In this document: piece after piece, positions 1 to 35,018 of the stretch
How positions within the stretch are numbered: position 1 is the stretch's first letter
How the letters are laid out: every line of letters begins with the position of its first letter
Virus record (IMG/VR): IMGVR_UViG_3300038441_001119
Location: 124,001 to 188,000 of that record
Length of the DNA: 64,000 bases
Strand: one strand, 5' to 3'
Notes under the pieces: model-generated
Told to the model about the DNA's origin: nothing
The model's database searches: none
Seen by the model: only the letters and a program-made list of their open reading frames with translations
Made by a program: the position numbers and the translations under genes

Positions 1-148
1 TGGAGCTTGGTGCGAGTTTGTAAATCTCTTCCAAGGTTTCACATGCGTCCTCAGGTTCGAATTTATAGGTCCTTGAACCTGAAAGACTGTAGAGAGTTCC
101 GATGCCTGCGTGATACAAAACTGGAATTAAAAGTGCTGACATACTCAT
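1..148 (-). CDS. Hypothetical protein, truncated by window edge (MSMSALLIPVLYHAGIG...)
   Basis: ATG at 148 overlaps the TGA of 145..564 (ATGA); frame is open to position 1 (hand-translated). Confidence 0.5.
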   Translation of the reverse strand, partial: MSMSALLIPVLYHAGIGTLYSLSGSRTYKFEPEDACETLEEIYKLAPSS

Positions 149-564
149 ACGAAAATATATTCTTCGGTTATTGGTTCGGTTGTTGGTTCTATTGTGGTGA
201 AGTCGTTGCAGTGTCCTACGTCTTTCATCATAATGGCGAAAGCAAGGGCACCCCATGTAATACTCTGCGATCCTGCGGAATTGAGATACATCTTCTTCAT
301 GGAAGCAGGCATATGGTCCTCTTCGAACTCCTTTGCAACCGCCAGTATATTTCCGGCATGCCCCCAAATATCGTAAGACAGATCCAGAATTTTATTCACG
401 CACGCATTAATGTTCATGAGGACATCCTCTAGTGGAACAGTGTGCTTGTCAGGTTGAATGACTACTCCGTCTGGTTCTCTGGCTATGTGCGCAAATCCGG
501 GGATGTACACATCAGTCCAGTGCCTCTTGGGTCTACCTTCTTTGGGCTTATGGTACGGTATCAT
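145..564 (-). CDS. Hypothetical protein with C-terminal tag (EPITEEYIFV); paralogue of 561..968
   Basis: Starts MIPYH; aligns by eye with 561..968 (IP..., DL.Y.+G..G.I); ATGA-coupled. Confidence 0.85.
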   Translation of the reverse strand: MIPYHKPKEGRPKRHWTDVYIPGFAHIAREPDGVVIQPDKHTVPLEDVLMNINACVNKILDLSYDIWGHAGNILAVAKEFEEDHMPASMKKMYLNSAGSQSITWGALAFAIMMKDVGHCNDFTTIEPTTEPITEEYIFV

Positions 565-968
565 ACGAATACGTATTCCTCGGTTACTGGTTCCAGAACA
601 GAGGCAGTTATCACTGAATCACCTAAGTAACCATTATAATGCCCCGTAGCTTTTTCCATTATTTCCAAGGGTAAGATTGACCAAATGGAACCTCTACTTG
701 CCTCTATGTACTCAGGTGTAAGTACGCCTGAAGAATTAAAAGCACTGGAGGCATCTACGATTTGGCCTACAGTACCGTAGACTGCGTAGAACAGGTCATG
801 CATCTGCCCTGACTGGTGGCCGAGCGCCTCTACCACCTGTTTGATGGTTCCCGGTTCGGCTGGCTCTATCCTAATACCTTCCTTTTCGTAAATTACCTTA
901 CCGTAGTAAGGAATAGAGAAAGATGGGTAAGTGCGGTAGCTAGCAGATCTGCTGTGGTACGGTATCAT
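561..968 (-). CDS. Hypothetical protein with C-terminal tag (EPVTEEYVFV)
   Basis: Starts MIPYH; paralogue of 145..564; ATGA overlaps at both ends. Confidence 0.85.
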   Translation of the reverse strand: MIPYHSRSASYRTYPSFSIPYYGKVIYEKEGIRIEPAEPGTIKQVVEALGHQSGQMHDLFYAVYGTVGQIVDASSAFNSSGVLTPEYIEASRGSIWSILPLEIMEKATGHYNGYLGDSVITASVLEPVTEEYVFV

Positions 969-1531
969 ACGAATACATATTCCTCGGTTATGGGTTCGGT
1001 GGGCGCGTCAAAGAATTCATCCGCAAAGAAAACACCGCAGATGCGCTTGCGAGTGTAAGCCACCATAGAGCTATCGAAGTGAGTAAATGTTCCCGCCTTT
1101 CTACGTAGATTAATCTCAACCTGATAAGCATGATAGTATGCGGTCATGATGTTGTCATGATGCACACTGGCGGTATCAAATACCTTCCTGAACATCTTCT
1201 CCATAGCCCTTGTTTTCTTGGACATAGCGGAGATGCTGAGTGTAGACATTTCCTCTAACTTCAGGAACTCCGCCAGATAGGCTCTGTCTGGGTTCTTGGG
1301 AAGGGCCAGAAGTTCTGGAGGTGTGTAGACAGAGTCGTATTCCTCTTCCTCTTCATCCTCATCATACACGTCAAGCTCGTCATCATAATCGTCGTCTTCG
1401 TATTCCTCGGTATTGTCTTCGTCCATTGGTTCTTGGGTTGCTATTGTTGTGGTTGTCTCGCGATATGCCCAAGTGCCTTCCAACATTATCGTATCTTCTC
1501 TTCTGGTTAGGATTTCTAGCTCCATGGGCAT
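965..1531 (-). CDS. Acidic hypothetical protein with C-terminal tag (EPITEEYVFV)
   Basis: Long D/E tract; ends in the shared motif. Confidence 0.85.
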   Translation of the reverse strand: MPMELEILTRREDTIMLEGTWAYRETTTTIATQEPMDEDNTEEYEDDDYDDELDVYDEDEEEEEYDSVYTPPELLALPKNPDRAYLAEFLKLEEMSTLSISAMSKKTRAMEKMFRKVFDTASVHHDNIMTAYYHAYQVEINLRRKAGTFTHFDSSMVAYTRKRICGVFFADEFFDAPTEPITEEYVFV

Positions 1532-1546
1532 ATTTGTTGTGGTTGT

Positions 1547-2458
1547 TTAGATGAAGGTCATTTCCTCATCGATAGGTTCGAGACACTTCGGATCTACCGA
1601 GGTGTCTACTGCTGCCTTTGCCTTTTTACCGAATACTTGGCCGTACAGATTCCTGTTACCTTCGCCGATGAGTGCGTCTCGTAGCACTGAATTCATCATC
1701 TCGTCTAAATTTCGCATGTAAGCCTCGCGGTCGCGATTGGCTTGTGCGAGTTCTTCATCGGTTGGTGCACGAACTTCACGAACCTGCACTCCAACCGGTC
1801 TACCGAAGCGATCCAGTTGGTACGTAGGAGCATAAGTGTGGTCGGTAGGTAATACTGTGTTAGCATTAACCGTAGCGCCCTCATTGTTCAAAGCTTCCGC
1901 AGCAGCTACGCCCGCATCGTACGCTTCTCGTGCTATACGATCTGCAGGAACAGCTACGAACGTAGGGGGTTCTGCAAACGTTGCTGGAGGGTAAGCATAG
2001 TGGTTAGTAGGTCGAATCCAGCCTCGTCCTTGCGTGGGAGGTGCAGGGACTGCAGGGGCACCCTCAGGTTCGTCCATAGCGCGTGCTGTCTGCTCTAATA
2101 ACTCCTGCACCTCGTTCGTAACCCGCATAGCTTCCACATGTTGTCGCGCAATGCCTGCCCAGTTGACCGTTGTATGTCCCACGGTTTCCGTCGTGACGGT
2201 TCCTCCGTTATTCACCGATACATTGTTACCATGGGCATCGTTGATATGGACGGCACCGCCCGCTGGGTATGTTACCCGCAGTGTATCGGTGTTACTCATC
2301 CACTCGACGGGCATCTGTGTTGTTGTCATGTAACGCTGATACAAGGCATCGTCCGTAGGGCTTGCATATACTTGGTACCCGGTTGCTGTGTTGTAATCAG
2401 CTGCAGTATGGGTATGGGCACGGAGTGCGCGACCTACCATTTGAATATCTTCATTCAT
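1547..2458 (-). CDS. Low-complexity (A/T/P-rich) hypothetical protein with C-terminal tag (EPIDEEMTFI)
   Basis: Track ORF 1547..2533; ATG 2458 (MNEDIQ) preferred because it overlaps the upstream stop. Confidence 0.8.
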   Translation of the reverse strand: MNEDIQMVGRALRAHTHTAADYNTATGYQVYASPTDDALYQRYMTTTQMPVEWMSNTDTLRVTYPAGGAVHINDAHGNNVSVNNGGTVTTETVGHTTVNWAGIARQHVEAMRVTNEVQELLEQTARAMDEPEGAPAVPAPPTQGRGWIRPTNHYAYPPATFAEPPTFVAVPADRIAREAYDAGVAAAEALNNEGATVNANTVLPTDHTYAPTYQLDRFGRPVGVQVREVRAPTDEELAQANRDREAYMRNLDEMMNSVLRDALIGEGNRNLYGQVFGKKAKAAVDTSVDPKCLEPIDEEMTFI

Positions 2459-2969
2459 ATAACGTGTATACGTATTTTCTAAGTGCTTCCTGCGTATCAG
2501 TTTCTCCAGTGATGTCTTGCAGGAATTTGACATTCACGTTTTTCCGGTCCTCCATGCTGACCACGCGGGCATCAGGGAAGAACAGATTGGTTAAGTTGCA
2601 TATGCGTATGTTTGTAGGCACGTAGAAGCTCTTGGTTCCGCTGACTATGTTGGCATGTTCCATAATCAAGCGTAAGACCTTCTCAGGATGTGCTGTACAA
2701 ACTACCGCACTTTTGGATTCATCTGCTATCTGCTGTAACCATCCGGTTAGCTGACCTGCAATTAGAATCGAAAAGTCGAAGTAGTTGGTTTTCTTTACCA
2801 CTTCGACCGTCTTGGGAACATAGGGTATCAAGGTCTTCACTCCTTCATACGACATGTCCATCACTTTGGCTAATGTAAGTCCATTACCCTCCCTGTACGC
2901 TTCGTACGCACAGAGAGGATAGAATGGTTCACCGCCAAGTGTGATTTCAGCGGTGTATATGGGGATCAT
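2451..2969 (-). CDS. Hypothetical protein
   Basis: 172-aa ORF, TAATG-coupled to the upstream gene. Confidence 0.75.
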   Translation of the reverse strand: MIPIYTAEITLGGEPFYPLCAYEAYREGNGLTLAKVMDMSYEGVKTLIPYVPKTVEVVKKTNYFDFSILIAGQLTGWLQQIADESKSAVVCTAHPEKVLRLIMEHANIVSGTKSFYVPTNIRICNLTNLFFPDARVVSMEDRKNVNVKFLQDITGETDTQEALRKYVYTLYE

Positions 2970-3208
2970 TATACTTCCTCGTCGGCAAGCAAGCCGCGAT
3001 TGATCATCTCCTTTTGTAGGGCGAACATCCGGTGAAGCCTACGGGATTCAATCCTATAGGCGCTCTTCAGGTGATCATCCTCCATCTTGGAGACTTGTAT
3101 GGTTCTTTCATCCTTGGTGCTCCATAGAACATCATCGGGATCACATCGCTTACAAGCTAGTCTTGCCAAACACATGGCAAATCTGAATACAAAATTTTGA
3201 CTTTTCAT
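2969..3208 (-). CDS. Small phage protein (W-x-TKD...M-x-DDHL type)
   Basis: Motif WSTKDERTIQVSKMEDDHL; start 3208 lies just downstream of the hairpin. Confidence 0.65.
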   Translation of the reverse strand: MKSQNFVFRFAMCLARLACKRCDPDDVLWSTKDERTIQVSKMEDDHLKSAYRIESRRLHRMFALQKEMINRGLLADEEV

Positions 3209-3221
3209 TTTTAACAGCAGA

Positions 3222-3246
3222 AAGGCCCCGGGGTTACCGGAGCCTT
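3222..3246 (-). terminator. Probable intrinsic terminator hairpin
   Basis: AAGGCTCCGG-TAACC-CCGGGGCCTT followed by TCTGCTGTT; weak U-tract. Confidence 0.55.
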
Positions 3247-3284
3247 CCATCAGATCGTTAGATCCGTATATTTATCTTCCTTGT

Positions 3285-3755: not shown

Positions 3756-4198
3756 ATAACATCGGCGGATGACGCCGTTCTATTCAAAAATGCATGTAGT
3801 GGATAAATATAGTATACCCCGTTTGTCGAGGGGTACGCTATCGAAGAGCAACCTTGTTTCAGGTCGATGTTCTCTCCGTCATGTTCCTGTGGAACCAATA
3901 TGAAGCCCGAGTGTCGAGGATGCATAAGAGGATCGAAGGCGATCAATGTTCGGTCTTCGTAAATCTCATGCCACTCATCGATTACCTTGGAAGGTTTCGG
4001 ACTCATCAACTCCTGAAACAGAGGAATCTTCTCCTCTACAAGAACCTTAACACTCAAGGCGGTGCTGAGAGGGTTGTCTTCCCTGTCATCAATTTCCTTG
4101 AATGCGTCATACAGATTATCCGAATAGATTTTGCCAACATACGGTTTGAGTCTTTGGATGATCTCCTTAGCCTCCCAAATCCGAATCTGCTTCGCCAT
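3743..4198 (-). CDS. Hypothetical protein
   Basis: 151-aa ORF overlapping the end of recA. Confidence 0.7.
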   Translation of the reverse strand: MAKQIRIWEAKEIIQRLKPYVGKIYSDNLYDAFKEIDDREDNPLSTALSVKVLVEEKIPLFQELMSPKPSKVIDEWHEIYEDRTLIAFDPLMHPRHSGFILVPQEHDGENIDLKQGCSSIAYPSTNGVYYIYPLHAFLNRTASSADVICES

Positions 4199-5609
4199 TA
4201 CTTACCTCCTGTGTTCCCCACTCATCTTCTTCTCCCCAGTCGTTGCCGTCCTGAAGAGATTCGCCAATGGAACCCTCAATAGTCTCAAGTGGATCATGGT
4301 AGCCTTGAATCTTGAGATTCTTGGCTGTCTGGTCCAGTATATCCGTGTCGGCGTGCAGCGCCCTGTAGAACTCCGTGTAGGTTGCCCCTGTGAGTTCCAG
4401 TACTGGTGCGCTGATACGTCTCAACTTGATACTGCAGTCTATTGCCTTGTTTTCCGCCAACCATTCAGCGTTGTACCGATCAAAGCGAATCACCCGGTCA
4501 AGGTAACCTTCGCTCTTATCAGATGCCGGAATATCGACGTACTTGTCGTTATGTAGGTCGTACTCGATCACACGGGACTCGGCGCCCCATGAGTTCTTAT
4601 GCATACGTGCCCTGATTGTCTTACCAACGGTGTCTCCGCCAGAGTTCTTAACCAGACCCTTACGGGACAGTAGAATCTGCATGGAGTCCAGCTGGTTGAA
4701 TGCCTTACCACCCACCTTGGTGACGTTGAACAGGGCAGCAGCATCGGCGGCAAGCTGAGGACCGCCCTTACCAGACATGTCCACCTTGTCGTTTTGGTGC
4801 TGAATCAGAAACAACGTAACATTGTTTTCACCCAGAATGTACGGAAGTCGACGTACCATACGGTGGGCCGCTTTAGCGTGACCCATGTTGGAGTGGTCGA
4901 TGATGTCTTTCTGTTTGTCGCTCATGTTGTCTCCGAAGTCGTAGAAGCCCTGTGCCTCGTCTTGAGACATCAGCTTACCCCACGGGTCGATGACAGCGAT
5001 GAGCGGGACATGCATAGGGATGGAAACCGAAGCCTTCCGACCTCCGGTTTGCTTACCTCGCATGACCTCAATCCAGTCGATCAGCTTCTGATAACTCTCC
5101 ACAACCGACCGTGCCGTGTCATAGTGAAGGGCCTTTACCAGTCGCTTGGCCATTGCTGGATTTGAATGCATGATACGAGCCACATGGTTTTTACGCAGGG
5201 GCTTGTTCTCACATTCTTGGTGATAAACAGGTGAACCGTTAAGAAGGGCTACGCCTTCCAGATAGTGCACCAAGGAACTTTTACCAGTACCTTCCGCACC
5301 GATAATCTCAATCAGACCGCCACTGGGGAAGCCCGGATTATCGAACAGGTACTTGAGAGGGAGGTCGTGGACAGGAATCATTTCCCGTTCGACATCTCCG
5401 AATGATTTGAATTGTGTCGGTTTGTTCTTTCGGCGTGCGCTCAAGGTGTGAATCGTTTCCTGCACCTTTTCGCTAACCTCATCCGCATGATCTAGGAAGC
5501 TGTATCCGTAAATAGATTCCGCTTTCTGAGCCGGTTTCTTTACAGCCTTGACTTCTTTAACTTCTTGAATTTCATCAGTTTGTGTGTCTTCTTTCTTCTT
5601 TCTTGCCAT
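4167..5609 (-). CDS. recA: RecA/UvsX-like recombinase
   Basis: GFPSGGLIEIIGAEGTGKSS Walker A; IAVID Walker B; GGKAFN and KNS motifs. Confidence 0.88.
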   Translation of the reverse strand: MARKKKEDTQTDEIQEVKEVKAVKKPAQKAESIYGYSFLDHADEVSEKVQETIHTLSARRKNKPTQFKSFGDVEREMIPVHDLPLKYLFDNPGFPSGGLIEIIGAEGTGKSSLVHYLEGVALLNGSPVYHQECENKPLRKNHVARIMHSNPAMAKRLVKALHYDTARSVVESYQKLIDWIEVMRGKQTGGRKASVSIPMHVPLIAVIDPWGKLMSQDEAQGFYDFGDNMSDKQKDIIDHSNMGHAKAAHRMVRRLPYILGENNVTLFLIQHQNDKVDMSGKGGPQLAADAAALFNVTKVGGKAFNQLDSMQILLSRKGLVKNSGGDTVGKTIRARMHKNSWGAESRVIEYDLHNDKYVDIPASDKSEGYLDRVIRFDRYNAEWLAENKAIDCSIKLRRISAPVLELTGATYTEFYRALHADTDILDQTAKNLKIQGYHDPLETIEGSIGESLQDGNDWGEEDEWGTQEVSNGEADSDLGG

Positions 5610-5623
5610 ATTATACAGTTGTA

Positions 5624-5654
5624 GAGGAGGGGCAGTATAACACCGCCCCTCCTC
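5624..5654 (-). promoter_or_regulatory. Intergenic GC-rich hairpin (processing, attenuation or weak terminator)
   Basis: GAGGAGGGGC...GCCCCTCCTC 10-bp stem with no U-tract. Confidence 0.5.
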
Positions 5655-5661
5655 CGGTCAA

Positions 5662-17540: not shown

Positions 17541-19640
17541 TTAGATGAAGACCATTTCTTCTTCAAATTCAGAAAACATTCCCGGAGCAGTTACGCTGAC
17601 AGGAATTGCGTCTTCAAGTTGTCTGTCGAAGAATTCCCAAGATGATCGCGGACTGGGACCACAGCCAAACCGATGCATCAGGGACGTGGTCTTTTCTGGA
17701 ATAGTCGCATCACTGAAATTAGTGAGAACCATTTCCTGTGAGATGTAGTTACCATCGAACAGACGACCAGTACCGTTTACAAGGGGTACATTGAGAAGAG
17801 TCTCTGTATCTTCGCAGTTGGCAATCTGATCTCTGGCAAAGGCCAACAGTTTCCTGTAGTCGTACTCTCCAGAGGTAACAAATTGTTCAACAAAGCCAAT
17901 AACAGGGTACAGCTCTTTTGCTATGTCTTCCAGTTGTTTCCACTGTGCGACAGTGGCTGCATGTTGGTTCGGAGCGACAAGATGGGCGTGGTGGCTGGCG
18001 GCGCTCAGGGAAAGAGTCATGTTGATGCTGGCCAACCACGGCAGCCCTGTTCTAGACAGACCTCCGGGGACAGCTTTGACCATGGCGGGCATGACGAAAT
18101 CCTCATCTTCCAGTCTTCCCCACTCGTTCTCAGTAGTAGGAATCCAACTTGGTCCCATGTGGTTGTTGCAGACGTCCGCAGGAGACATCCACAGAGTGGT
18201 CAGATAAGTGCAATACAGCGTATCAACTTGAACGTGGTTACCGCGCATGAGCATGTCTGCAGACTGTCCCGCAGCATACATCTGGGGATGCTGCATAGAA
18301 ATACCATAGCTGTAAGGGTCGTTTCTGGCGTAGACGCCCCAGCCTTCCGCAGTATTAGCTTCAGCCCTAAAAGACGTCGTCCAGCGCGTGGTTCCCCGAG
18401 GATTATCACCCGGACCAAGCTGTGGTAGCCACCAAGTGTTCCGCTTATCTTCCTCCGCAACGGCGGTATAACCTCCTTTACGGATGTCGACGGTCATCTT
18501 GGTGTCAGTGCAACTTCCATTTTCCACCTCACGAATAGTGCGGTTACGATGAAAGACCTTCATCTTGTGATTGGTCTGAAACGCCCGGAACATGTGTTCC
18601 GTTCTCCGAAGACGCAGCAGGTTCACACGAATGTTACCCTCTCCTTCGACGTCGGTGGTAAGGCCGCTCACGTAGAGATTACAGAAGCCAACATCTACGG
18701 GCATCTCACGGAAAGGCGCTTTGACTTTGTACGCCAAGGTGAGTTTGCGGTTCTTGAGTCTAGCCATACCTTTGGCGTAATTCTCCACCTCAACCGTACC
18801 TGTATTTTTGTACAGAGAGAAAGTAGACTCCATGAACCGGTCACCGTTGGATGCCATCTCCATCGTGTGATGTGCTTGCTGCACTCGGTCACTGATGTAA
18901 TGAACAATGGTACTCTCGATCCGAATGTTACCGTTATCCATCATCTTGATAAACAAGCTGACAGGACGCTGGTCACCTGAAGGATCATGGACCATACATT
19001 GATGCCCCTTTACCCGAACCAGTTCCCCGTCCTTGGTTCCCCACAGTTGCTTGCCTTCCGCATTGGTGTGCGTAAAGACTTCGATGGACGAGGTTACCCG
19101 TGTGTCCGTACTGGGGATATACCTTGCGAAGTGATGCGCATTGCTCTCACTGTAAGTACGTGAGACAACACCTCCTCTAGAAAGAGGAGCAACTGCCAAA
19201 GAAGTCCCTCCTCCATTGATGGCGGCGAAAAGCGGAGTGTCAATGGACATAGATGAATCTATACCGTTGGTCCTCATAATCGTGAACGAATCGCTTCCCG
19301 AAACCAGCTGCAGTCGCTCCGAAGAGGTGTTGAGGTTGATGTTCATGGCTGCTGCTAGAAAATCCTCCATCGTAGACAGAGTCATTCCAGTTGCCTCACC
19401 TATCGTGACATCTACTGGAGAGCCAATCGTCTTGGAAAGAACATCGCGGTCAAAGCCAGTAGCAAAACGCATGAAAAAATGAACAGGGGAGAGGGTTGCA
19501 CCTTCTCCGTCTGGTCGATGGTAGTCCTCACGTTGCTGAGGACCGTACCGAACGGCGCCGATGACGCTGTTCGGGTGCGTTGGGCTGATGTAACGTTGAT
19601 ACGTGTCCCCTCCGCGTACGAAATAGTTGATTACTCTCAT
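17541..19640 (-). CDS. 699-aa hypothetical protein with C-terminal tag (SEFEEEMVFI)
   Basis: Long ORF, ATGA-coupled to the RAMP gene; no recognisable catalytic motif. Confidence 0.8.
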   Translation of the reverse strand: MRVINYFVRGGDTYQRYISPTHPNSVIGAVRYGPQQREDYHRPDGEGATLSPVHFFMRFATGFDRDVLSKTIGSPVDVTIGEATGMTLSTMEDFLAAAMNINLNTSSERLQLVSGSDSFTIMRTNGIDSSMSIDTPLFAAINGGGTSLAVAPLSRGGVVSRTYSESNAHHFARYIPSTDTRVTSSIEVFTHTNAEGKQLWGTKDGELVRVKGHQCMVHDPSGDQRPVSLFIKMMDNGNIRIESTIVHYISDRVQQAHHTMEMASNGDRFMESTFSLYKNTGTVEVENYAKGMARLKNRKLTLAYKVKAPFREMPVDVGFCNLYVSGLTTDVEGEGNIRVNLLRLRRTEHMFRAFQTNHKMKVFHRNRTIREVENGSCTDTKMTVDIRKGGYTAVAEEDKRNTWWLPQLGPGDNPRGTTRWTTSFRAEANTAEGWGVYARNDPYSYGISMQHPQMYAAGQSADMLMRGNHVQVDTLYCTYLTTLWMSPADVCNNHMGPSWIPTTENEWGRLEDEDFVMPAMVKAVPGGLSRTGLPWLASINMTLSLSAASHHAHLVAPNQHAATVAQWKQLEDIAKELYPVIGFVEQFVTSGEYDYRKLLAFARDQIANCEDTETLLNVPLVNGTGRLFDGNYISQEMVLTNFSDATIPEKTTSLMHRFGCGPSPRSSWEFFDRQLEDAIPVSVTAPGMFSEFEEEMVFI

Positions 19641-27620: not shown

Positions 27621-29501
27621 ATGTATAAGTCTAACAAAGACCTTTATTCGCGAATTAGTAACGATACTAACTTCCGACTCAATATTAACAAACTATTTGG
27701 GAGATTTCAAATAGAAGCAGCGGAAGCAGCAAAAGGTCGTCCCGGCGCTGAGGAGAAGCGGGACAAGACGATGATGGAACTATTCCAGTATTGTGGTTGG
27801 AACGTTGGCATTTTCTTTCCCCTGTTCTTCCCCAAGATGATTGAAGGGGGTCCTCTGAATGTGATGCGTCGTCCGTTCGGATTCATGATGACCGAGCTGA
27901 ACGTCTCTGGTTACACCTGTATCAGGGGTAGTCGTCAGATCGCAAAGTCCACCAATCTTGTTGGCAGGCAGCTTGTTAAGGGATTCCTGTTTCCTCGGTT
28001 CAAGTCGATGTACATCTGTCCTCACAACAACCACAAGAAAACCTATCAGAACAGGTTTGCTGAAATGGAGGCGGCATGTCCGTTCATGGACTTCGTGTAC
28101 AAGAACCCTCGTCTCCGCACCAACCTTTCGTACAAGCAGTATCCTCTGGAAGGTGAAGTAAACATTGTGAACTGTCTGACCGACTCTTCGCAGGCGCGTT
28201 CGAAAACCACTGATGAGCTTCTGTACGACGAGTACCAGCTCTTTGACTGGACTCTTGAAGGTGATATTCGTCCCTGCCAATCGGTCTCTAAGATTCCGAT
28301 GACTGTGTATGCAGGAACCTCCACCACTGTCGACTCCCCTCTGGAGTTCCGGTACCAAGAGGGAAGCCAACATACGTGGAAGGTCAGAAGTCCGAACGGT
28401 AAGGATTGGATTGATTTCGGTGACGAGGAGTTGATGATCAAATGCATACGTCCTCGCGGTTTGGTGTGTCCTTACACTGAACGTCCCCTGAATGTCGCAC
28501 AAGGCGAGTACACTCCTACTTACAAGGATAGACATGAATATGGTTACACCAGTATCCATGTTCCTCAGCTTATTATCAAAGACAAGGTGGAGCACCGTAT
28601 CGACTGGGCTAAGATCTACGAAGCTTTTGAGGAGTTCGATAGACCGAAGTTCATGGAAGAGTTCCTTGGTATCCCCTCGGAACTGGGTGCTCGGGAAATT
28701 ACTGAGGCAGACCTTAAGGCGATCTGCACTCTTGGGAGCAAAGACGAGGTCTTTGAAAGGGTCAAACGCGGTGACTACAGTATTATTGTCTCTGGCTTTG
28801 ACTGGGGTGGTTCTGACCACATTCCACACATCAAAGCTTCCCGCGTTAGTTTCACTGCCAATGCTGTTCTTGGTCTATCTGCTGATGGATACGTTGATAT
28901 CCTTCATATGAGGCAGCACCATGGTATGAACTATGACTTCATTACCGGGCAGATTGCTGAGGACTACAGGAAGTACCAGTGTAACGCACTAGCTTGTGAC
29001 GCTGCTGGTGGTCAAGTCTACCTCAACAATCTTGATAAGCTTCTGAATCATAAGACTAACTTCCGGTTCGGTTACCACGCGCATGTCTTCCAACTGATGG
29101 GAGTTCCTTCGCATGGAGCGCCGAACCATTACACGTTGAACAAGCACGAGTCTATCGCCCAGCTGTTCCAAGCCATCAAGCACAAGAAGATTCGCTGCTA
29201 CAAGTGGGAGGAGTCCGGGCCGCGTCTTAGCGAGATCCTGAATGTACAACGTGTTCTTATCGAACCGCAGTCGGGACCTCCGAAGTATCACTATCACATG
29301 ACACCTCGGAATCCCGACGATACGGTTCATGCTTTGAACTACTCATATATTCTGATGCGCTTGCTTGCTGGTGAAAACGTTGTTCACGACGAACGCTTGA
29401 TGCGTACTATTCAACAGGCTGTGCGGGGCGAGAATACTTTCTCCCCATTCCAGACATTCGGTGGTGTACCGAATCTGTTCGGGGAAATCGTTTCCGGTTA
29501 A
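27621..29501 (+). CDS. terL: Terminase large subunit
   Basis: GSRQIAKST Walker A variant; LLYDEYQ Walker B; GTS coupling motif; GFDWGG and PDDTVHALNY nuclease motifs; start MYKSNK inferred. Confidence 0.88.
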   Translation: MYKSNKDLYSRISNDTNFRLNINKLFGRFQIEAAEAAKGRPGAEEKRDKTMMELFQYCGWNVGIFFPLFFPKMIEGGPLNVMRRPFGFMMTELNVSGYTCIRGSRQIAKSTNLVGRQLVKGFLFPRFKSMYICPHNNHKKTYQNRFAEMEAACPFMDFVYKNPRLRTNLSYKQYPLEGEVNIVNCLTDSSQARSKTTDELLYDEYQLFDWTLEGDIRPCQSVSKIPMTVYAGTSTTVDSPLEFRYQEGSQHTWKVRSPNGKDWIDFGDEELMIKCIRPRGLVCPYTERPLNVAQGEYTPTYKDRHEYGYTSIHVPQLIIKDKVEHRIDWAKIYEAFEEFDRPKFMEEFLGIPSELGAREITEADLKAICTLGSKDEVFERVKRGDYSIIVSGFDWGGSDHIPHIKASRVSFTANAVLGLSADGYVDILHMRQHHGMNYDFITGQIAEDYRKYQCNALACDAAGGQVYLNNLDKLLNHKTNFRFGYHAHVFQLMGVPSHGAPNHYTLNKHESIAQLFQAIKHKKIRCYKWEESGPRLSEILNVQRVLIEPQSGPPKYHYHMTPRNPDDTVHALNYSYILMRLLAGENVVHDERLMRTIQQAVRGENTFSPFQTFGGVPNLFGEIVSG

Positions 29502-30298
29502 ACCCAGACAAATTCCTCGGTCACCTCATCGCGGGTCTCAGCGAACTTGTGTTCGAGGTACTTGGGTGCGAGTTCGTTCCACTTAGCTTCGGCTAACAGT
29601 TTCACCTCCGTACTGTCGGGGTTATGTAGGGCGTACTTTGCCATATTGACCGCGTGTACGGTTACACCTTGCATCACACGGGGGAATATGTGCAAGTTTT
29701 TGGTGAATACGTCTACGTGCCTCGTGGTCTCGCTTCCATAGTTGAATAAGTTCAACGTACCGATCACCACCTTCTCCGGTGACACTTCATACATCGAATG
29801 GACATCGAGCTGAGAGTGCCCAAATAGAGCCGACCTTGTTTGTAGCGATTTACCAATCAATACTTCTCCACTAACGAACTGCACTTCTGCTCCAGAAGAA
29901 ACGTGACCCCTCACGTTGACGCTTTCTCTGAACTCTATCTTGGTACCAGAAGGACGAGCGTGGATACTATCGAGGGATTCCACGCTTGATCGGAACACAA
30001 GATCCCCGTCCGATTCGATACGACCATGCGCGTGAACACTTTCTAGGAAAATTGTCGTTCCAGTTCTCCGACGAGTAAAGTCCATGTTCTTGAACATTAC
30101 TACCGTACCAACTCCCACAGTCAATCCTTCATAAGTATGGCCTGCTGGTAGATGTACGATACCAAGTCCGGATTCTAGGACAAGTCTCGACTCTCTTGAA
30201 AGAGTGAGCAGCGTTGACTGTAGAGCTGGAAGAAGGATCTTCTCTTTGGAGAACCTATGCGCAGTCGTCAGGTCTTCTTTAGATATATGAAAGTCCAT
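29498..30298 (-). CDS. Beta-helix paralogue 4 with C-terminal tag (DEVTEEFVWV)
   Basis: GLG...LTVGVGT shared N-terminal motif; V/I/G-rich short strands. Confidence 0.75.
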   Translation of the reverse strand: MDFHISKEDLTTAHRFSKEKILLPALQSTLLTLSRESRLVLESGLGIVHLPAGHTYEGLTVGVGTVVMFKNMDFTRRRTGTTIFLESVHAHGRIESDGDLVFRSSVESLDSIHARPSGTKIEFRESVNVRGHVSSGAEVQFVSGEVLIGKSLQTRSALFGHSQLDVHSMYEVSPEKVVIGTLNLFNYGSETTRHVDVFTKNLHIFPRVMQGVTVHAVNMAKYALHNPDSTEVKLLAEAKWNELAPKYLEHKFAETRDEVTEEFVWV

Positions 30299-31098
30299 TA
30301 TATGAATACGTACTCTTCTTCGAGGACAGAGGTTGGCAGCTGAGGTCCATTGATGATGACTTTGGACTCCAGCTGTTTGGCGTAGGTCGGATGTCCCTTG
30401 AACAGGAACTCGTCACACCTGACAGGGTACTGCACATCGTTGGAATCGACGTTGTGGTGCCACAGTCCTTCCACGGTAACTGTGGGTAACGTTTTTTGTG
30501 CTGGGATGTCGGCGGGCCAGAGCTGGATCATACCTGTAGTCTCCAGTTTGGGGCATTTGACATTGCACTGTGCCATATGTATCTTGACAACCTTCACGGG
30601 ACTATCGAAGACGATATTGGCGAACTTCTCAGAATCGTTCTCAGCCATCGTGACAGGAACGACAATGATATAGTCGGCCTCGGCAGGACCCTTGATGTGA
30701 ATGAACATGTCACTCAATGCTACACCAGATGGACGTAACGACAGATTCAGTACAAGATCAGCTCCGGATGACCCTTTGTAGCTACCAGCAACAACAAGTT
30801 TATGCTTAACGATAATCTGCCGATTGTGCTCAAGGTTACCTCCTAAGTTTCCTGTAGTTAAAGTAAATTGGCAGGAATTAATCCTGATATTCGTTCCGCT
30901 ACCTACTTCGAGATGCCCTACGACACAGGTGGAACTAATATCGTATGCACCGAGGTCAGGAGCGATGGCAACATTGGGTAGACGGGATGGTTGTCCTTGC
31001 CTGCCTTGCTCTCGTCCCCATGCTGTAATAGCTGCGCTAAGGTTCGTAGTACGGGAGGTGATATTGATGTCGATTGTTGGTATTTCAGGTGGTTTCAT
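30298..31098 (-). CDS. Beta-helix paralogue 3 with C-terminal tag (SVLEEEYVFI)
   Basis: PDLG...LEVGSGT motif. Confidence 0.75.
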   Translation of the reverse strand: MKPPEIPTIDINITSRTTNLSAAITAWGREQGRQGQPSRLPNVAIAPDLGAYDISSTCVVGHLEVGSGTNIRINSCQFTLTTGNLGGNLEHNRQIIVKHKLVVAGSYKGSSGADLVLNLSLRPSGVALSDMFIHIKGPAEADYIIVVPVTMAENDSEKFANIVFDSPVKVVKIHMAQCNVKCPKLETTGMIQLWPADIPAQKTLPTVTVEGLWHHNVDSNDVQYPVRCDEFLFKGHPTYAKQLESKVIINGPQLPTSVLEEEYVFI

Positions 31099-31101
31099 AA
31101 T

Positions 31102-31860
31102 TTAGATCCACACGAATTCTTCTGTGATGGGTTCTGTAATGATGGCGACCTTTTTGAAGGCTATATTGGTGAACTTAAGTGACCCATGGTTAACCTTAGG
31201 TCCAAGTTCCTCCGTGCGCACCGCTACTGACAGGGTGGAATTGGTTGGCGGTACGTTGAACTCCGTACAATCTACAACAATATGCTCGGTTGAGCGTCTA
31301 CTGTTGGTAGCCGCAATACTCAACGCTGTAAGGGTACCATCTACACTCAGATGAGAGTACATACCGCGAGCCACTACCATGTGGCTGAGGGTGACATCTC
31401 CTTCTACAGTCAGGCTACCTGTTATTAGCAGCTTGTTGGTACCTGATACTTCTTTGCTGATAGGACCGCATATGGTACCTGACGACTTGGTCATACAATA
31501 CAAAGTACCGAAAGCGTGGTTGGCGAACGAGGCATTACCTGCTGGTCGACTTATCCCATTTTCAAACAGGAACTTTCCGTACAAGTCCATGGAGTACTGG
31601 TACCCCATTTTCCCCTGTACATGCACAGTACCATGTATGGAAATTCCAGATTCGAAATACAGTTCCGTACCTGCGCCGATCCGAAGGTGACGTACCACTG
31701 CCCAGAAAGCGATATAGACCACACCTAGTCCTCCGGGAACATCCCAGTCAATCGTGCGTCCCCGGTTGTTCATCGTGGACATACTGACCACTCTGTGAGT
31801 CATGCGAGGACGAAGCTCACAGTGATCCCACCCGTTTTGTGTTATGGTTGGAAATTTCAT
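31102..31860 (-). CDS. Beta-helix paralogue 2 with C-terminal tag (EPITEEFVWI)
   Basis: GLG...LRIGAGT; ITGSLTVEGDV repeats; ATG 31860 overlaps the upstream TGA. Confidence 0.75.
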   Translation of the reverse strand: MKFPTITQNGWDHCELRPRMTHRVVSMSTMNNRGRTIDWDVPGGLGVVYIAFWAVVRHLRIGAGTELYFESGISIHGTVHVQGKMGYQYSMDLYGKFLFENGISRPAGNASFANHAFGTLYCMTKSSGTICGPISKEVSGTNKLLITGSLTVEGDVTLSHMVVARGMYSHLSVDGTLTALSIAATNSRRSTEHIVVDCTEFNVPPTNSTLSVAVRTEELGPKVNHGSLKFTNIAFKKVAIITEPITEEFVWI

Positions 31861-32621
31861 ACAAATACGTACTCCTCTTCTATTGGACTGGTGACTGGTG
31901 CATATCCTTGCTTTGGTACATGCATAGGTTTTTCGCGAACATGGACGCTCTTGAAGTGTTCCTTGGTAGTACCATCTCCGAGACGGTCGCATATTACGTG
32001 GGTAGGCAAGGGACCACCGGCTCTGTCAGAGGACCATCCTGCCTCAAACGTACCGGCGTCAATATATGGAGGTGTGTTTCCGACAGGGAAGTCATAATGT
32101 TGTACCCAGTCGGCTAAGCTAAATGTACCACTGACAGTTACCTCCGAGCTTCCAGCAGAACCATCAGTATATTTTCCAGTGCAGGTGAGGTCTCCTTTGA
32201 CGATAAGCTGGGTTTGCTGCCCGTCCATTCTGATGGAGGTTGTTTCGCAGTTTCCGTCTACTGTAACAACGTCTTTTACAATGATGCGAACACCATACGA
32301 CGATTTGACGATAAGATCGCCTTTGACATGGCACGTTTCGTAGAACCCTAGGTCACCCTTAAGGACAGTGAGGTCGCCTCCGAAAACCGAATCGCGGTAA
32401 CAGAACGTAATCCCGTCCTGCATGGTTAGGTTAGTTCCATCGCCTACAATCGCGGTTCCGATAACAAGCGATCCATCATGGTAAATATCTCCCAAGTCTG
32501 GATCAATATGCAAGTCCATGTCACCTTTGCTGATGACTCTGTTGCTGTGTACCGGGAATGGCCAGACGATCTGACCGTCATGTGAAATGTTGTCTTTTGT
32601 GATTACTATTTTTTCTCTCAT
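31857..32621 (-). CDS. Beta-helix (bactofilin-like repeat) paralogue 1 with C-terminal tag (SPIEEEYVFV)
   Basis: PDLG...IVGDGT; VKGDL, VDGNC, VKGDL, VSGTF repeats. Confidence 0.78.
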   Translation of the reverse strand: MREKIVITKDNISHDGQIVWPFPVHSNRVISKGDMDLHIDPDLGDIYHDGSLVIGTAIVGDGTNLTMQDGITFCYRDSVFGGDLTVLKGDLGFYETCHVKGDLIVKSSYGVRIIVKDVVTVDGNCETTSIRMDGQQTQLIVKGDLTCTGKYTDGSAGSSEVTVSGTFSLADWVQHYDFPVGNTPPYIDAGTFEAGWSSDRAGGPLPTHVICDRLGDGTTKEHFKSVHVREKPMHVPKQGYAPVTSPIEEEYVFV

Positions 32622-32633
32622 TTTGGTTACACG

Positions 32634-32666
32634 AAAAAGCCCCGGAAGATTGCTCCTCCGGGGCTT
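32634..32666 (-). terminator. Rho-independent terminator
   Basis: AAGCCCCGGA...TCCGGGGCTT followed by TTT. Confidence 0.75.
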
Positions 32667-32699
32667 CGGTTTAGTTGAGTTTAGGAATTGTCTTCCATC

Positions 32700-32852
32700 T
32701 TATTGGCAGGATTCGCATGTACCATCAAGGTTGCATGCTGGTACGCCTAGTTCTGGCCAATCTTCATCTTCAACTTGGGACGGACCTTTCTGACCGATAA
32801 GTTCGTCTTCCTGTTCCTTACTCAACCGTTGCGTTTCGTTCTCCTTGCTCAT
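32700..32852 (-). CDS. 50-aa acidic peptide ending ACNLDGTCESCQ (RNR C-terminal tail-like)
   Basis: Hand-translated MSKENETQRL...WPELGVPACNLDGTCESCQ; sits between the AAA gene and the terminator. Confidence 0.65.
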   Translation of the reverse strand: MSKENETQRLSKEQEDELIGQKGPSQVEDEDWPELGVPACNLDGTCESCQ

Positions 32853-34203
32853 CTTCTTTTACAGAATCTTTAAGGTGGTGCTGCCAGTACCACTTGAAAG
32901 CCGCCTGAATACATTCGTTCTCCCAATTGGCGGCAGGCTGATCCTTCGAACTTTCGACCATAGCATCAATCTCGGCTTGAGGCAAACCATTCATGATACG
33001 ATTGGCGAGGGAGGTGCGTCCTTCCTTGCTCAAATAGGGAACTTCCACCTTACGATCCACGCGTCCCGGTCTGAGCAGCGCCGGGTCCAGTTTCTCGATG
33101 TGATTGGTTGTCATGATGACCATACCCAACAGTGGGTCGACACCTGACAGCATGTTCAGCAGCGTTTCGAACGACAGCTTGGGACCATCGTGTTTCACTT
33201 GGTTTTCACGTCCAACAAAGATGGCATCAATGTCTTCCAGAAGGATGATCTTCGGTTCCCCCGCAGTCACCTTCTTATATAGTTTCTCCACGTCCGCATC
33301 ACAGAAGGTAGCCAAGTGAACCTTCAGGATCGGAATACCGTACTCTTCGGCGAGCACGCGTACAAGGGCGCTCTTACCGGTACCGGGGGCACCATAGAGC
33401 ATCAAACCACGTTTGCAGGGGATACCTCGTTCACGCATCCATGTCTTTGCTTTGATGAAGGTTTCAAATTCATCACGAAGGACCTGCATGCTTGGGTCCA
33501 GATAGTACCGGGAGAATGGCTTGATCTTCTTGGAAGTACCGAACTCATCAACCACACGGTTATACATTGGGTATACGTCCACAGCCCGTTTACCGGCTCC
33601 ACGAACAATTCTGAGAACCGAGTCCATGGAACCTGCTCCGGGAGAGTCGTGGGCCATTTTAGCTCCGCCTCCACCATGGGGAGCTGGGTCGGCATTACCG
33701 AACATACTGTCCACCGCATTCTTGTTGTTGGTAGTGATGGAGCCGTAGACGTTCTCCACGTAGAAGTTATCAGACCTTAGGGAGGCCAGACTCTCATTCT
33801 CGTGCCCATACCAGCTTTGTCCTGCCTTTTCGATCAGCTTTTTGCCATTCACCCAGCCACGTATGTAAGTGAGCGTACCTTGACTCTCACTTTCCACAGT
33901 CCAGATTACCAGCTTGCCTTTCAACCAGAAGATAGCAGGCTTTGTATCCACTTCGATCATGACCGGGGCTAGGTCATTGATCTCTCGGTGTCGTTCAAAG
34001 ACGCCTACAAATTGAGTGGGACCAAACTTGATATGCTTCCACTCTTTCCATAGTTGGCAGTGTAAGTGAGAAGCAGGTCTCCCTGTGATCTTCACCCTTA
34101 CCACCAGAATTGTACTAAGGCGCAACAAGAAGGACTTGATCTGCCCATACAGCATGATGATAGGAGCCAGCCATGCCAGTCCTGCGATATTGCTTAAATT
34201 CAT
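32818..34203 (-). CDS. BCS1-like membrane-anchored AAA+ ATPase
   Basis: N-terminal hydrophobic segment; RGIPCKRGLMLYGAPGTGKS; LLEDID; TTNHIEKLDPALLRPGRVD (SRH). Confidence 0.88.
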   Translation of the reverse strand: MNLSNIAGLAWLAPIIMLYGQIKSFLLRLSTILVVRVKITGRPASHLHCQLWKEWKHIKFGPTQFVGVFERHREINDLAPVMIEVDTKPAIFWLKGKLVIWTVESESQGTLTYIRGWVNGKKLIEKAGQSWYGHENESLASLRSDNFYVENVYGSITTNNKNAVDSMFGNADPAPHGGGGAKMAHDSPGAGSMDSVLRIVRGAGKRAVDVYPMYNRVVDEFGTSKKIKPFSRYYLDPSMQVLRDEFETFIKAKTWMRERGIPCKRGLMLYGAPGTGKSALVRVLAEEYGIPILKVHLATFCDADVEKLYKKVTAGEPKIILLEDIDAIFVGRENQVKHDGPKLSFETLLNMLSGVDPLLGMVIMTTNHIEKLDPALLRPGRVDRKVEVPYLSKEGRTSLANRIMNGLPQAEIDAMVESSKDQPAANWENECIQAAFKWYWQHHLKDSVKEDEQGERNATVE

Positions 34204-35018
34204 ACGATAAGGTTAAGGGTCTTTGCGAAAAACTTGATGTCGACATCTGGGTCGATTCCTTCAAGCCCAGTTTCAAGGGACCATGGTTTGCCATAGTGCG
34301 TTAGGAACAGATCGGTCTTCAACTTCTTATTGCGCCAATGTTTGGTCAGCTCAGAGAAGTGACAGTGGTTACCTCCCACCACTTTACCGTGATTCTTGGC
34401 ATCATGTATGACGATGTCAGATTGCTCACACAGGTCATGAGGCTCCATACAGTCGGACGTGAAAAGAACACGGTTACCGTTGTCACTGACGAACCAGAGA
34501 CCATAGTTGGACTTGAACTGGTCATCGTACATGCTGCCCGCTTGCTGCTTGAAGAGAGGCATGTGCCGTGAGAACTGATACTGGAACCGAATACCTTGCC
34601 AGACGAATGACTTGTAGTTGGGCATAGCATCGCGATCAAAGTAATCGTCAACAGTGATACCCCTTCCATCGTAGAACGCTTCCAGACCATGCATCAGTGC
34701 GGTGTCCAGTTCGTCCATAACGTCAGGGTGTCCGAACAACTTGGGACGTATCCTCTTTCCGTTCTCGTCAGTCTTGGGGATGTAGTACCTCGAATGGGCC
34801 AGCATCTCCAGACCTCCCATATGGTCACCGTGAATGTGGGAGATATAGACGGCATCAATATCCGTGAAGGGAATCTTGAACTCGTCCCTAAGGATGTAGG
34901 GAGTCGTGGTACCGCAGTCGAAAAGTAGTTTCTTGTTGTTGTGTTCAATAAGGAAGGAAGAGTTGCCTTCGTCCATAGTCGCGAAGGCTCCACCGTTTCC
35001 GAGGGAAGTGATTTTCAT
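34200..35018 (-). CDS. MBL-fold hydrolase (RNase Z / Apyc1-like cyclic nucleotide phosphodiesterase)
   Basis: LGNGGAF...NSSFLI...LLFDCG...SHIHGDHMGGLE; FTSD; HDA; THY; start MKITSLG. Confidence 0.85.
   Translation of the reverse strand: MKITSLGNGGAFATMDEGNSSFLIEHNNKKLLFDCGTTTPYILRDEFKIPFTDIDAVYISHIHGDHMGGLEMLAHSRYYIPKTDENGKRIRPKLFGHPDVMDELDTALMHGLEAFYDGRGITVDDYFDRDAMPNYKSFVWQGIRFQYQFSRHMPLFKQQAGSMYDDQFKSNYGLWFVSDNGNRVLFTSDCMEPHDLCEQSDIVIHDAKNHGKVVGGNHCHFSELTKHWRNKKLKTDLFLTHYGKPWSLETGLEGIDPDVDIKFFAKTLNLIV

What the first reader, a model, noticed from the sequence alone, without database searches (positions are those of the whole stretch)
1..2458. Left tagged cluster: translationally coupled cassette-like array with a duplicated gene junction
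Seen: four consecutive tagged genes. The junction GAACC...ACCGAGGAATAYGTATTCGTATGATACCGTACCA is nearly identical at about 552-593 and 956-997, so the tag, stop and next MIPYH start were duplicated together, even though the upstream genes (965..1531 versus 561..968) look unrelated. Inference: recombination at the tag-encoding sequence could append the tag to new genes and expand the array. The array probably continues beyond the left edge.
Basis: partly seen in the sequence, partly recalled or inferred. Interest (0 to 1): 0.65.

Follow-up and report, generated by a model that had tools for sequence, protein, structure and literature searches.

The report
Shared C-terminal tag on phage ORFans
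In an uncultivated 212-kb jumbo phage, twelve otherwise unrelated accessory proteins, five of them in this array, end in the same ten-residue C-terminal peptide, which looks like an address tag; the repeated gene junction is mostly explained by an old tandem duplication plus selection on that tag.

Summary
On the minus strand, genes 145-564 (tA), 561-968 (tB), 965-1531 (tC) and 1547-2458 (tD) all end in about E-P-[IV]-[TDE]-E-E-[YFWM]-[VIT]-[FW]-[VI]-COOH. The junctions 551-593 and 955-997 match at 40 of 43 nt. The array does continue past the left edge, by one more tagged gene (tL), and then stops at a conserved helicase.

The genome holds 12 such tags in four places. Every one lies directly before a stop codon. 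A tag profile found nothing comparable among 1.84 billion representative proteins.

tA and tB are old paralogues. tC is not related to them. Most of the junction identity follows from three constraints: the tag peptide, the overlapping stop/start (GTATGA) and the shared MIPYH N-terminus. A modest excess of shared synonymous codons, and tags that group differently from the gene bodies, hint that tags also move between genes.

Two distant syntenic relatives keep the same backbone but have no tags and no tagged genes. These are therefore lineage-specific inserts in variable slots.

What reads the tag is unknown. My best guess is targeting to the prohead, as with the T4 capsid targeting sequence. 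The main rival is recognition by an AAA+ ATPase.

The parts
1..148 (-). 5' part of tL, the fifth tagged gene. The whole gene is genome 123726-124148, which is window -274 to 148. It ends ...SVIDEDWVFV, and its ATG overlaps the tA stop.
145..564 (-). tA: 139-aa ORFan, starts MIPYH, ends ...EPITEEYIFV. Paralogue of tB.
561..968 (-). tB: 135-aa ORFan, starts MIPYH, ends ...EPVTEEYVFV. Paralogue of tA.
965..1531 (-). tC: 188-aa ORFan with a long acidic run, ends ...EPITEEYVFV. No detectable relation to tA or tB.
1547..2458 (-). tD: 303-aa ORFan, ends ...EPIDEEMTFI. Its start overlaps the stop of the 172-aa gene upstream by 8 nt.
551..593 (.). tB|tA junction repeat: tag codons, the GTATGA stop/start overlap, and the MIPYH codons.
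955..997 (.). tC|tB junction repeat. It matches 551-593 at 40 of 43 nt, with a longest exact run of 22 nt.
135..177 (.). tA|tL junction, 70% identical to the reference repeat. Only the tag and the ATGA overlap are shared.
2451..3250 (-). Untagged neighbours in the same tightly packed run: u172 (2451-2969, starts MIPIY) and u93 (2969-3250, ends ...ADEEV with a TAATG overlap). This may be a decayed copy of the junction, but the evidence is weak.
17541..19640 (-). t17k: large tagged ORFan, ending ...EFEEEMVFI. The ORF is 699 aa; the public gene call is 643 aa. It is absent from the syntenic position in relative G001.
29498..32621 (-). Second tagged cluster: four weak paralogues of about 255 aa (29498-30298, 30298-31098, 31102-31860, 31857-32621). 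They end ...TEEFVWV, ...EEEYVFI, ...TEEFVWI and ...EEEYVFV. They are probably beta-solenoid proteins.
32818..34203 (-). Classical-clade AAA ATPase, tentatively Bcs1-like, directly upstream of the second cluster. It is a candidate reader of the tag, but this is untested.

Best explanation
What it is. The left cluster is a run of five lineage-specific ORFan genes (tL, tA, tB, tC, tD). It sits in the hypervariable slot between the conserved UvsX-like recombinase and DEAD-box helicase genes of an uncultivated 212-kb jumbo phage.

The tag. Each protein ends in the same short linear motif of about 10 residues. A proline-containing linker comes first, then E-P-[IV]-[TDE]-E-E, then an aromatic/hydrophobic tip [YFWM]-[VIT]-[FW]-[VI] carrying the free carboxylate. 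Twelve proteins from at least eight unrelated families carry it. I read the tag as a protein-level address label that brings diverse accessory proteins to one common receptor.

The repeated junction. It arose when a tagged MIPYH gene was duplicated in tandem directly behind another tagged gene. The likely route is unequal crossing-over between the tag-coding repeats that flank it. It has stayed 40/43 identical while the gene bodies drifted to about 25-30% amino-acid identity. Three constrained elements coincide there: the tag, the overlapping stop/start GTATGA, and the conserved N-terminus.

Shown: the census of tags, their strictly C-terminal position, the tA/tB paralogy, the lack of relation of tC, and the absence of tags and tagged genes from two syntenic relatives.

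Inferred: the tag is read as a peptide, and tags spread between genes by recombination.

Mechanism I commit to (about 0.3 on its own). The tag targets these proteins into the prohead, so that they are packaged and ejected with the DNA. This would be a C-terminal counterpart of the T4 capsid targeting sequence. The invariant [IVLF]-x-E at positions -8 to -6 would be the site where a prohead protease removes the tip.
For: Tag census. There are 12 tags, all at C-termini, and none elsewhere in six frames.

Protein-level selection. The residues are conserved while codons vary among clusters. The palindromic coding of E-Y-V-F is perfect only in tB.

Unrelated bodies. Only tA with tB, and the four members of the second cluster, are related to each other. 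No Pfam or PHROG family matches any of the 12.

Linker and tail. They are modelled as disordered in the second-cluster protein t31k (the last ~60 residues).

Variable slots. Relatives G001 and G002 are colinear. Their UvsX-helicase gap holds 2 or 3 unrelated small ORFs, against 9 here. t17k is missing between two genes that are adjacent in G001. The region beside TerL is 3.7 kb in G001 against 9.9 kb here. Neither relative has a shared C-terminal motif.

Tag mobility. Synonymous codons are shared in excess, and tag grouping disagrees with body grouping.

Precedent. [quoted passage not shown] That 10-20-residue propeptide is cut off by the prohead protease, and the SPN3US protease has a C-terminal propeptide proposed to target it into the prohead (PMC7411985). 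[IVLF]-x-E is present in 12 of 12 tags.
Against: - No receptor was identified.
- No prohead protease of Pfam families S77 or S78 was found. The presumed structural proteins match no PHROG family, so the virion link is untested.
- The cluster lies in the replication module, not beside recognisable head genes.
- Known capsid targeting sequences are N-terminal.
- Strict conservation of the last two residues suggests recognition of a free C-terminus. That is more typical of PDZ-like pockets or AAA+ pores.
- An acidic motif will contain x-E by composition alone.
- The evidence for tag exchange rests on a few dozen nucleotide sites and is not corrected for multiple testing.
Confidence: 0.55

Rival explanations
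1. The tag is a degron or engagement signal for an AAA+ machine. The acidic-Tyr half and the nonpolar tip with its free carboxylate would work like the two halves of the ssrA tag. The reader would be the phage's own classical-clade AAA ATPases or a host protease. The tagged proteins would then be unfolded, removed on a timer, or translocated.
For: - The motif is always at the extreme C-terminus and has a hydrophobic tip.
- The phage encodes two PF00004 AAA ATPases whose nearest solved relatives are VAT, Cdc48, PAN, FtsH and Bcs1.
- One of them lies directly upstream of the four-gene tagged cluster. Like the tags, it has no counterpart in the part of relative G001 that was sampled.
- That ssrA is built in two parts, and that PAN, VAT and FtsH unfold ssrA-tagged substrates, is from my own knowledge.
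Against: - The genome has no ClpP, proteasome or FtsH-type peptidase partner.
- The tags do not end in the (L)AA typical of ssrA.
- A strong terminator hairpin separates the AAA gene from the tagged cluster.
- A 309-kb phage with a related AAA has no such tags.
- Bcs1-type ATPases are not known to read C-terminal tags (own knowledge).
Confidence: 0.25
2. The tag docks accessory factors on a replication or recombination hub. It would work like the acidic, aromatic-ended C-terminal tails of T7 gp4 and gp2.5 on the T7 polymerase, the T4 clamp-binding C-termini, or the SSB tip. Alternatively it mimics the C-terminus of a host protein to occupy a host hub.
For: - Six of the 12 tagged genes lie inside the replication module, among a helicase, UvsX, a family-A polymerase, primase, DnaB and SbcCD.
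- The motif is acidic and then aromatic/hydrophobic at a free C-terminus.
- The T7, T4 and SSB precedents are from my own knowledge.
Against: - No sliding clamp was detected.
- The core replication proteins themselves carry no tag.
- Relative G001 shares the whole replisome but has no tagged proteins.
- The last residue is V or I, not the terminal aromatic of the T7 and SSB tails.
- Six tagged genes lie outside the replication module.
Confidence: 0.12
3. The conserved unit acts at the DNA or RNA level, and the peptide is incidental. It could be a recombination or homing site, a ribosome-binding or re-initiation signal for the downstream gene, or a small hairpin.
For: - The junction is conserved in nucleotides (40/43).
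- GAGGAA lies 12 nt before the overlapping ATG.
- In tB, E-Y-V-F is encoded by a perfect 12-nt palindrome.
- Synonymous codons are shared in modest excess.
Against: - Across the 12 tags the residues are kept while codons change. Examples are GAA/GAG, TAC/TAT/TGG/ATG and GTA/GTC/GTG/ATT.
- Several tags are not followed by an overlapping gene: tL, tD, t17k and the last gene of the second cluster.
- The genome has no Shine-Dalgarno signal. Upstream regions are A/C-rich and G-poor.
- The palindrome is imperfect or absent in 11 of the 12 tags.
Confidence: 0.05

Closest known systems
Capsid targeting sequence (CTS) of T4 internal proteins (IPI, IPII, IPIII, Alt)
   Same: A terminal peptide of about 10 residues is the only thing shared by otherwise diverse, fast-evolving accessory proteins encoded at several loci. 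It contains a hydrophobic-x-Glu site of the kind cut by prohead proteases (PMC3012670, PMC7411985).
   Different: The T4 CTS is N-terminal, and its function is shown experimentally. Here the tag is C-terminal. No virion data exist, no S77/S78 protease was found, and there is no sequence similarity to the T4 CTS.
PeSL-mediated modular shuffling of ORFans in hyperplastic regions of T4-type phages
   Same: Short conserved sequences flank ORFan genes in variable slots between core genes, and are proposed as sites of homologous exchange that insert, delete or duplicate cassettes (PMC2839356).
   Different: PeSLs are intergenic promoter plus stem-loop units of about 100 bp. Here the repeat is coding (a tag plus overlapping stop/start), is 43 nt long with a 22-nt perfect run, and no recombinant product has been observed.
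ssrA tag with SspB and ClpX recognition
   Same: It has a similar length and layout: an acidic stretch ending in Tyr, then a short nonpolar tip with a free carboxylate (own knowledge).
   Different: ssrA is added co-translationally by tmRNA and ends in Ala-Ala. Here the tag is gene-encoded and ends [FW][VI]. No tmRNA or peptidase partner was found in the phage.
Acidic C-terminal tails of T7 gp2.5 and gp4; C-terminal clamp-binding motifs of T4 gp43, gp33 and gp55
   Same: Several phage proteins share a C-terminal docking peptide for one hub (own knowledge).
   Different: Those tails sit on core replication and transcription proteins. Here the carriers are ORFans, the core proteins are untagged, and no clamp was found.
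C-terminal tail of the herpesvirus scaffold protein and of phage prohead proteases (SPN3US gp245)
   Same: A C-terminal segment directs the protein into the procapsid and is then cleaved off (PMC7411985; the herpesvirus part is own knowledge).
   Different: Those are single scaffold or protease proteins, not a dozen unrelated cargo proteins.

Membership tests
T4-type capsid targeting sequence | A short terminal peptide shared by otherwise unrelated accessory proteins | tested here: met
   12 proteins in at least 8 unrelated families share only the tail.
T4-type capsid targeting sequence | N-terminal position | tested here: not met
   All 12 tags are at the extreme C-terminus.
T4-type capsid targeting sequence | Hydrophobic-x-Glu cleavage site used by a prohead protease | tested here: inconclusive
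   [IVLF]-x-E is present in 12 of 12 tags, but an acidic motif makes this likely by composition. No S77 or S78 protease was found.
T4-type capsid targeting sequence | The proteins are present in virions | not testable with these tools
   The phage is uncultivated and there is no proteome.
ssrA-like C-terminal degron | A nonpolar extreme C-terminus with a free carboxylate, preceded by an adaptor-binding stretch | tested here: met
   The motif is E-E-[YFWM]-[VIT]-[FW]-[VI]-COOH.
ssrA-like C-terminal degron | Ends in (L)AA; a cognate unfoldase-peptidase pair is present | tested here: not met
   The tags end in FV, FI, WV or WI. AAA ATPases are present, but no ClpP or proteasome.
Clamp-binding, SSB-tip or T7 acidic-tail motifs | The hub (a sliding clamp) is encoded, and the motif is of QL[SD]LF type or ends in a terminal aromatic residue | tested here: not met
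   No beta-clamp or gp45 domain was found. The tags have no Gln. The last residue is V or I.
PDZ ligand (class II, hydrophobic-x-hydrophobic-COOH) | A matching C-terminal tripeptide and a PDZ domain to read it | tested here: inconclusive
   The tripeptide pattern fits. The phage has no PDZ_2 or PDZ_6 domain. Host PDZ proteins could not be tested because the host is unknown.
PeSL or integron-like cassette array | Conserved intergenic promoter/stem-loop or attC-like repeats between the cassettes | tested here: not met
   The genes overlap or are 13-17 nt apart. The only repeat is the coding junction. No integrase search was made.
Tandem paralogue array | Neighbouring genes are homologous along their length | tested here: inconclusive
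   This holds for tA with tB (z 14.5; 24.6% identity by BLASTP over 122 aa, 30% in the full-length alignment). It does not hold for tC, tD or tL (z <= 1).

The most novel reading that the evidence does not exclude
The tag is a dedicated signal for a phage-encoded protein translocation system. The phage's two Bcs1-like AAA ATPases would recognise the C-terminal peptide and move folded tagged effectors across a barrier such as the cell membrane, or into a phage-made compartment or particle. One of the ATPases has a clear transmembrane helix, and the other lies next to the four-gene tagged cluster. This would be a virus-encoded counterpart of a signal peptide plus translocase.
Probability: 0.08. 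Interest if true: 0.85.

Novelty: new variant of a known kind. Interest (0 to 1): 0.6.

Why it matters
A ten-residue peptide shared by a dozen unrelated ORFans is a rare handle on the dark matter of jumbo-phage genomes. It marks a functional set of proteins with one destination or one partner, without needing homology. It also makes a direct experiment possible: use the tag peptide as bait, or fuse the tag to a reporter.

If the tag targets the capsid or a translocase, it would be a compact, portable delivery tag. It would also show that the logic of the T4 internal proteins has evolved independently at the other end of the protein.

The array itself shows how new accessory genes may be recruited. 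Any gene that acquires the tag-coding end by recombination joins the set, and the tag-coding repeats then promote duplication and loss.

Tried and rejected
**Relatives**
- No DNA match among GenBank phages.
- Only very distant core-gene relatives exist.
- The back-translated tag pattern is absent from IMG/VR. In JGI metagenomes it occurs only on this phage's own contig.
- The word-index protein search returned only self-hits for t17k, for the tA/tB profile and for the second-cluster profile. That tool sees only proteins 0.55-1.75 times the query length, so it says nothing about fusions or fragments.
- The exhaustive profile search with the 12 tails found 7 of the phage's own proteins and one repeat artefact. 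It lists only hits with E <= 0.001 (here 35.7 bits and above), so weaker tag variants would be missed.

**Function of the tagged proteins**
- Pfam, PHROGs and NCBIfam gave nothing.
- PDB sequence searches gave nothing.
- The ESM Atlas gave nothing usable for t17k.
- The AlphaFold2 model of tB was useless (pLDDT 37).
- The second-cluster model was weak (pLDDT 49.5). It is all-beta, and Foldseek gave no significant hit, although the top rows were all beta-helix proteins.

**Receptor**
- Complex prediction with the AAA ATPase and the tail of the neighbouring tagged protein returned 'no answer'. This is not evidence either way.
- No PDZ, ClpP, proteasome, S77/S78 protease, beta-clamp or gp45 clamp domain is in the genome.
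- A 309-kb phage with a related AAA has no tags near that gene or anywhere else.

**Rejected readings**
- GAGGAA as a Shine-Dalgarno site: the genome has no SD signal.
- A palindromic DNA site: it is not conserved among the tags.
- Translational coupling as something special to the array: it is common genome-wide.
- tC as a hidden paralogue of tA/tB.
- The u93|u172 junction as a third copy: its DNA cannot be aligned to the others.

**Population-level test**
Full report
**Setting**

The window is bases 124001-188000 of a single 212,352-bp virus record that CheckV rates complete. It has 49.5% G+C and about 273 ORFs, nearly all on the minus strand.

The region around the finding is a replication and recombination module. 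It contains:
- a DEAD-box helicase just left of the window,
- a UvsX-like recombinase (4167-5609),
- a family-A DNA polymerase with UDG and exonuclease domains (6975-10322),
- primase, a DnaB-like helicase, a second helicase, SbcC/SbcD, and the large terminase on the plus strand.

Elsewhere the genome carries fragments of multisubunit RNA polymerase beta and beta' subunits, as in phiKZ/AR9-type jumbo phages.

It has no close relative among GenBank phages or in IMG/VR. The same phage was assembled in seven contigs from public samples, always with the same gene order.

On the minus strand, 145-564 (tA), 561-968 (tB), 965-1531 (tC) and 1547-2458 (tD) each end in a near-identical peptide. The stretch 551-593 matches 955-997 at 40 of 43 positions, with a 22-nt perfect run. 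This unit is made of the last ten codons of the upstream gene, a TGA stop overlapped by the next ATG (GTATGA), and the codons for M-I-P-Y-H.

The array continues beyond the left edge with one more tagged gene, tL (genome 123726-124148). It then ends at the helicase.

**The tag is a genome-wide feature**

Twelve ORFs end in it:
- two at genome 75450-76855,
- the five of this cluster,
- a large ORF at window 17541-19640 (699-aa ORF; 643 aa in the public gene call),
- four consecutive ORFs of about 255 aa at window 29498-32621.

The consensus is E-P-[IV]-[TDE]-E-E-[YFWM]-[VIT]-[FW]-[VI]-COOH, usually preceded by a proline-containing stretch.

In the six-frame translation, the six-residue core occurs 11 times, each time directly before a stop. 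Shuffled sequence gives 0.15 occurrences, and 0.02 next to a stop. A profile of the twelve tails finds exactly those twelve places in the genome.

**Which genes are related**

With the tags removed, only tA and tB are clearly homologous. BLASTP gives 24.6% identity over 122 residues. Smith-Waterman z is 14.5, and none of 300 shuffles reaches the score.

tC, tD and tL show nothing against tA/tB or each other (z at most 1.0). A profile of the tA/tB core finds no other protein in the phage. The four proteins of the second cluster are weak paralogues of each other.

None of the twelve matches any Pfam, PHROG or NCBIfam family.

**Peptide or nucleotide signal?**

Among the twelve tags the residues are kept while the codons vary. 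Several tags are not followed by an overlapping gene. The genome shows no Shine-Dalgarno signal: upstream regions are A/C-rich and G-poor. So the GAGGAA in the tag is not a ribosome-binding site. Start/stop overlaps are common throughout the genome (43 of 244 neighbours). The E-Y-V-F codons form a perfect palindrome only in tB. Selection therefore acts on the peptide.

Within the subfamily EP[IV]TEEY (t76k, tA, tB, tC) there is a modest excess of shared synonymous codons, including the rare ATA and GTA. Per-pair p is 0.004 to 0.06, uncorrected.

The tags also group differently from the gene bodies. tB is closest to t76k, which lies 48 kb away (31 of 36 nt, and 15 similar residues). tA is closest to tC (30 of 36). 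The paralogues tA and tB share only 25 of 36. This is the pattern expected if tag-coding ends are exchanged between genes, but it rests on few sites.

**Comparative context**

Two distant relatives from IMG/VR are colinear with this genome over the replication and packaging region: G001 (82.9 kb, 43% complete) and G002 (21 kb).

- Between UvsX and the helicase they carry two or three small ORFs that are unrelated to the nine found here. That gap is 1.1 kb in G001 against 4.5 kb here.
- t17k is absent between two genes that are adjacent in G001.
- The region beside the terminase is 3.7 kb in G001 against 9.9 kb here. It lacks the second tagged cluster, the AAA ATPase, the Apyc1-like metallo-beta-lactamase and the macro-domain gene.
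- Neither relative has any shared C-terminal motif.

The tagged genes are thus lineage-specific accessory inserts in variable slots.

The tag itself was not found elsewhere. Degenerate DNA patterns hit only this phage's own contig in IMG/VR and JGI metagenomes. The tail profile, run against 1.84 billion representative proteins, returned seven of the phage's own proteins and one repeat artefact.

**How the junction arose**

A tagged MIPYH gene sitting behind the tagged tC gene is flanked by two similar tag-coding stretches. Unequal exchange between them gives exactly a tandem copy, with the junction repeated. The bodies have since diverged to about 25-30% identity, while the junction is held by three overlapping constraints: the tag, GTATGA and MIPYH. 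This explains most of the identity without recent recombination.

It parallels the PeSL-mediated shuffling of ORFans in T4-type hyperplastic regions (PMC2839356). It remains unproven, because the read-level test could not be run.

**What reads the tag**

This is unknown. Three models fit a C-terminal docking peptide.

1. Prohead targeting. T4 internal proteins are a diverse set that share only a capsid targeting sequence, which the prohead protease removes. The giant phage SPN3US has a C-terminal targeting propeptide on its protease (PMC3012670, PMC7411985). All twelve tags contain [IVLF]-x-E upstream of the tip. Against this model, no S77/S78 protease was found and the presumed structural proteins are unrecognisable.

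2. Recognition by an AAA+ machine. The phage encodes two classical-clade AAA ATPases. One is directly upstream of the second cluster, and its N-domain tentatively resembles BCS1_N. The other has a strong transmembrane helix. However, there is no peptidase partner. A terminator hairpin lies between that ATPase gene and the cluster. A 309-kb phage with a related ATPase has no tags.

3. Docking on a replication hub or a host hub. No clamp was found, the core replication proteins are untagged, and the relatives share the replisome but not the tags.

I rank these at about 0.30, 0.25 and 0.12. A single co-folding attempt gave no answer and is not counted.

**Limits**

- Structure prediction failed for tA/tB (pLDDT 37). 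For the second cluster it was weak: all-beta, pLDDT 49.5, with top but non-significant Foldseek rows all beta-helix proteins.
- The word-index search is blind outside 0.55-1.75 times the query length.
- The exhaustive search lists only hits with E <= 0.001 (here 35.7 bits and above).
- The host is unknown.

**Verdict**

The interesting object is not the duplicated junction but the tag system as a whole. It is a new variant of the terminal address-label principle known from T4, with an unknown reader.

Noticed in passing
L006:8697-8775, L006:14124-14199 and L006:14214-14291 (genome 65697-65775, 71124-71291): ARAGORN reports three tRNA-like genes with 8-nt anticodon loops (ccta, gaaa, tttg) among nine tRNAs. 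The first contains CTA, so it might read TAG. TAG ends only 17 of 273 ORFs, but coding density is high under the standard code, so nothing shows recoding.
   Followed up: partly
window 34200-35620: Directly upstream of the AAA ATPase are an Apyc1-like metallo-beta-lactamase (anti-Pycsar family, just over the Pfam cut-off) and a weak macro-domain protein. Together they look like an anti-defence islet. Relative G001 lacks them.
   Followed up: partly
window 32818-34203 and L005:290-1999: There are two paralogous classical-clade AAA ATPases with long N-terminal regions. One N-domain resembles BCS1_N by Atlas features and structure (TM about 0.5). The other has a strong predicted transmembrane helix at about residues 73-95.
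   Followed up: partly
window 2944-3014: The untagged gene u93 ends ...ADEEV with a TAATG overlap onto u172, which starts MIPIY. Only tA, tB and u172 start with MIP in the whole genome. This may be a decayed copy of the junction, but its DNA does not align with the others.
   Followed up: yes
window 570-581: In tB the residues E-Y-V-F are encoded by a perfect 12-nt palindrome, because GAA/TTC and TAC/GTA are reverse complements. It is imperfect or absent in the other eleven tags, so it is probably incidental.
   Followed up: yes
window 1330-1425: tC carries a long acidic Asp/Glu/Tyr-rich run with an internal TEEY. This produces a fourth partial copy of the tag-coding repeat at 1401-1421.
   Followed up: no
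window 32622-32680 and 5610-5661: G+C-rich hairpins sit just upstream of gene starts. One is a terminator-like hairpin with a T-run about 10 nt before the first gene of the second tagged cluster. The other precedes UvsX. They recall the stem-loops of T4-type PeSL cassettes.
   Followed up: no
window 6975-10322: The family-A DNA polymerase is 1115 aa long and has an N-terminal uracil-DNA glycosylase domain. ThyX-like and NADAR genes lie nearby, left of the window.
   Followed up: no
L003:4721-8137, L006:3624-4844, L007:5642-7561: There are split multisubunit RNA polymerase beta/beta' fragments of the phiKZ/AR9 type, yet the polymerase is family A rather than the split family-B enzyme of nucleus-forming phages.
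   Followed up: no
L006:18450-19220: The tail of t75k (...PVREEDVTDWEFV) can be read as two overlapping half-tags. It is the weakest match to the tag profile (22.9 bits).
   Followed up: no
genome 1-100 and the last ~140 bases (L003 and L011): The start of the contig is repeated near its end with one mismatch. This suggests a terminal repeat or a circularly closed assembly. Another assembly of the same phage is 57 bp longer.
   Followed up: partly
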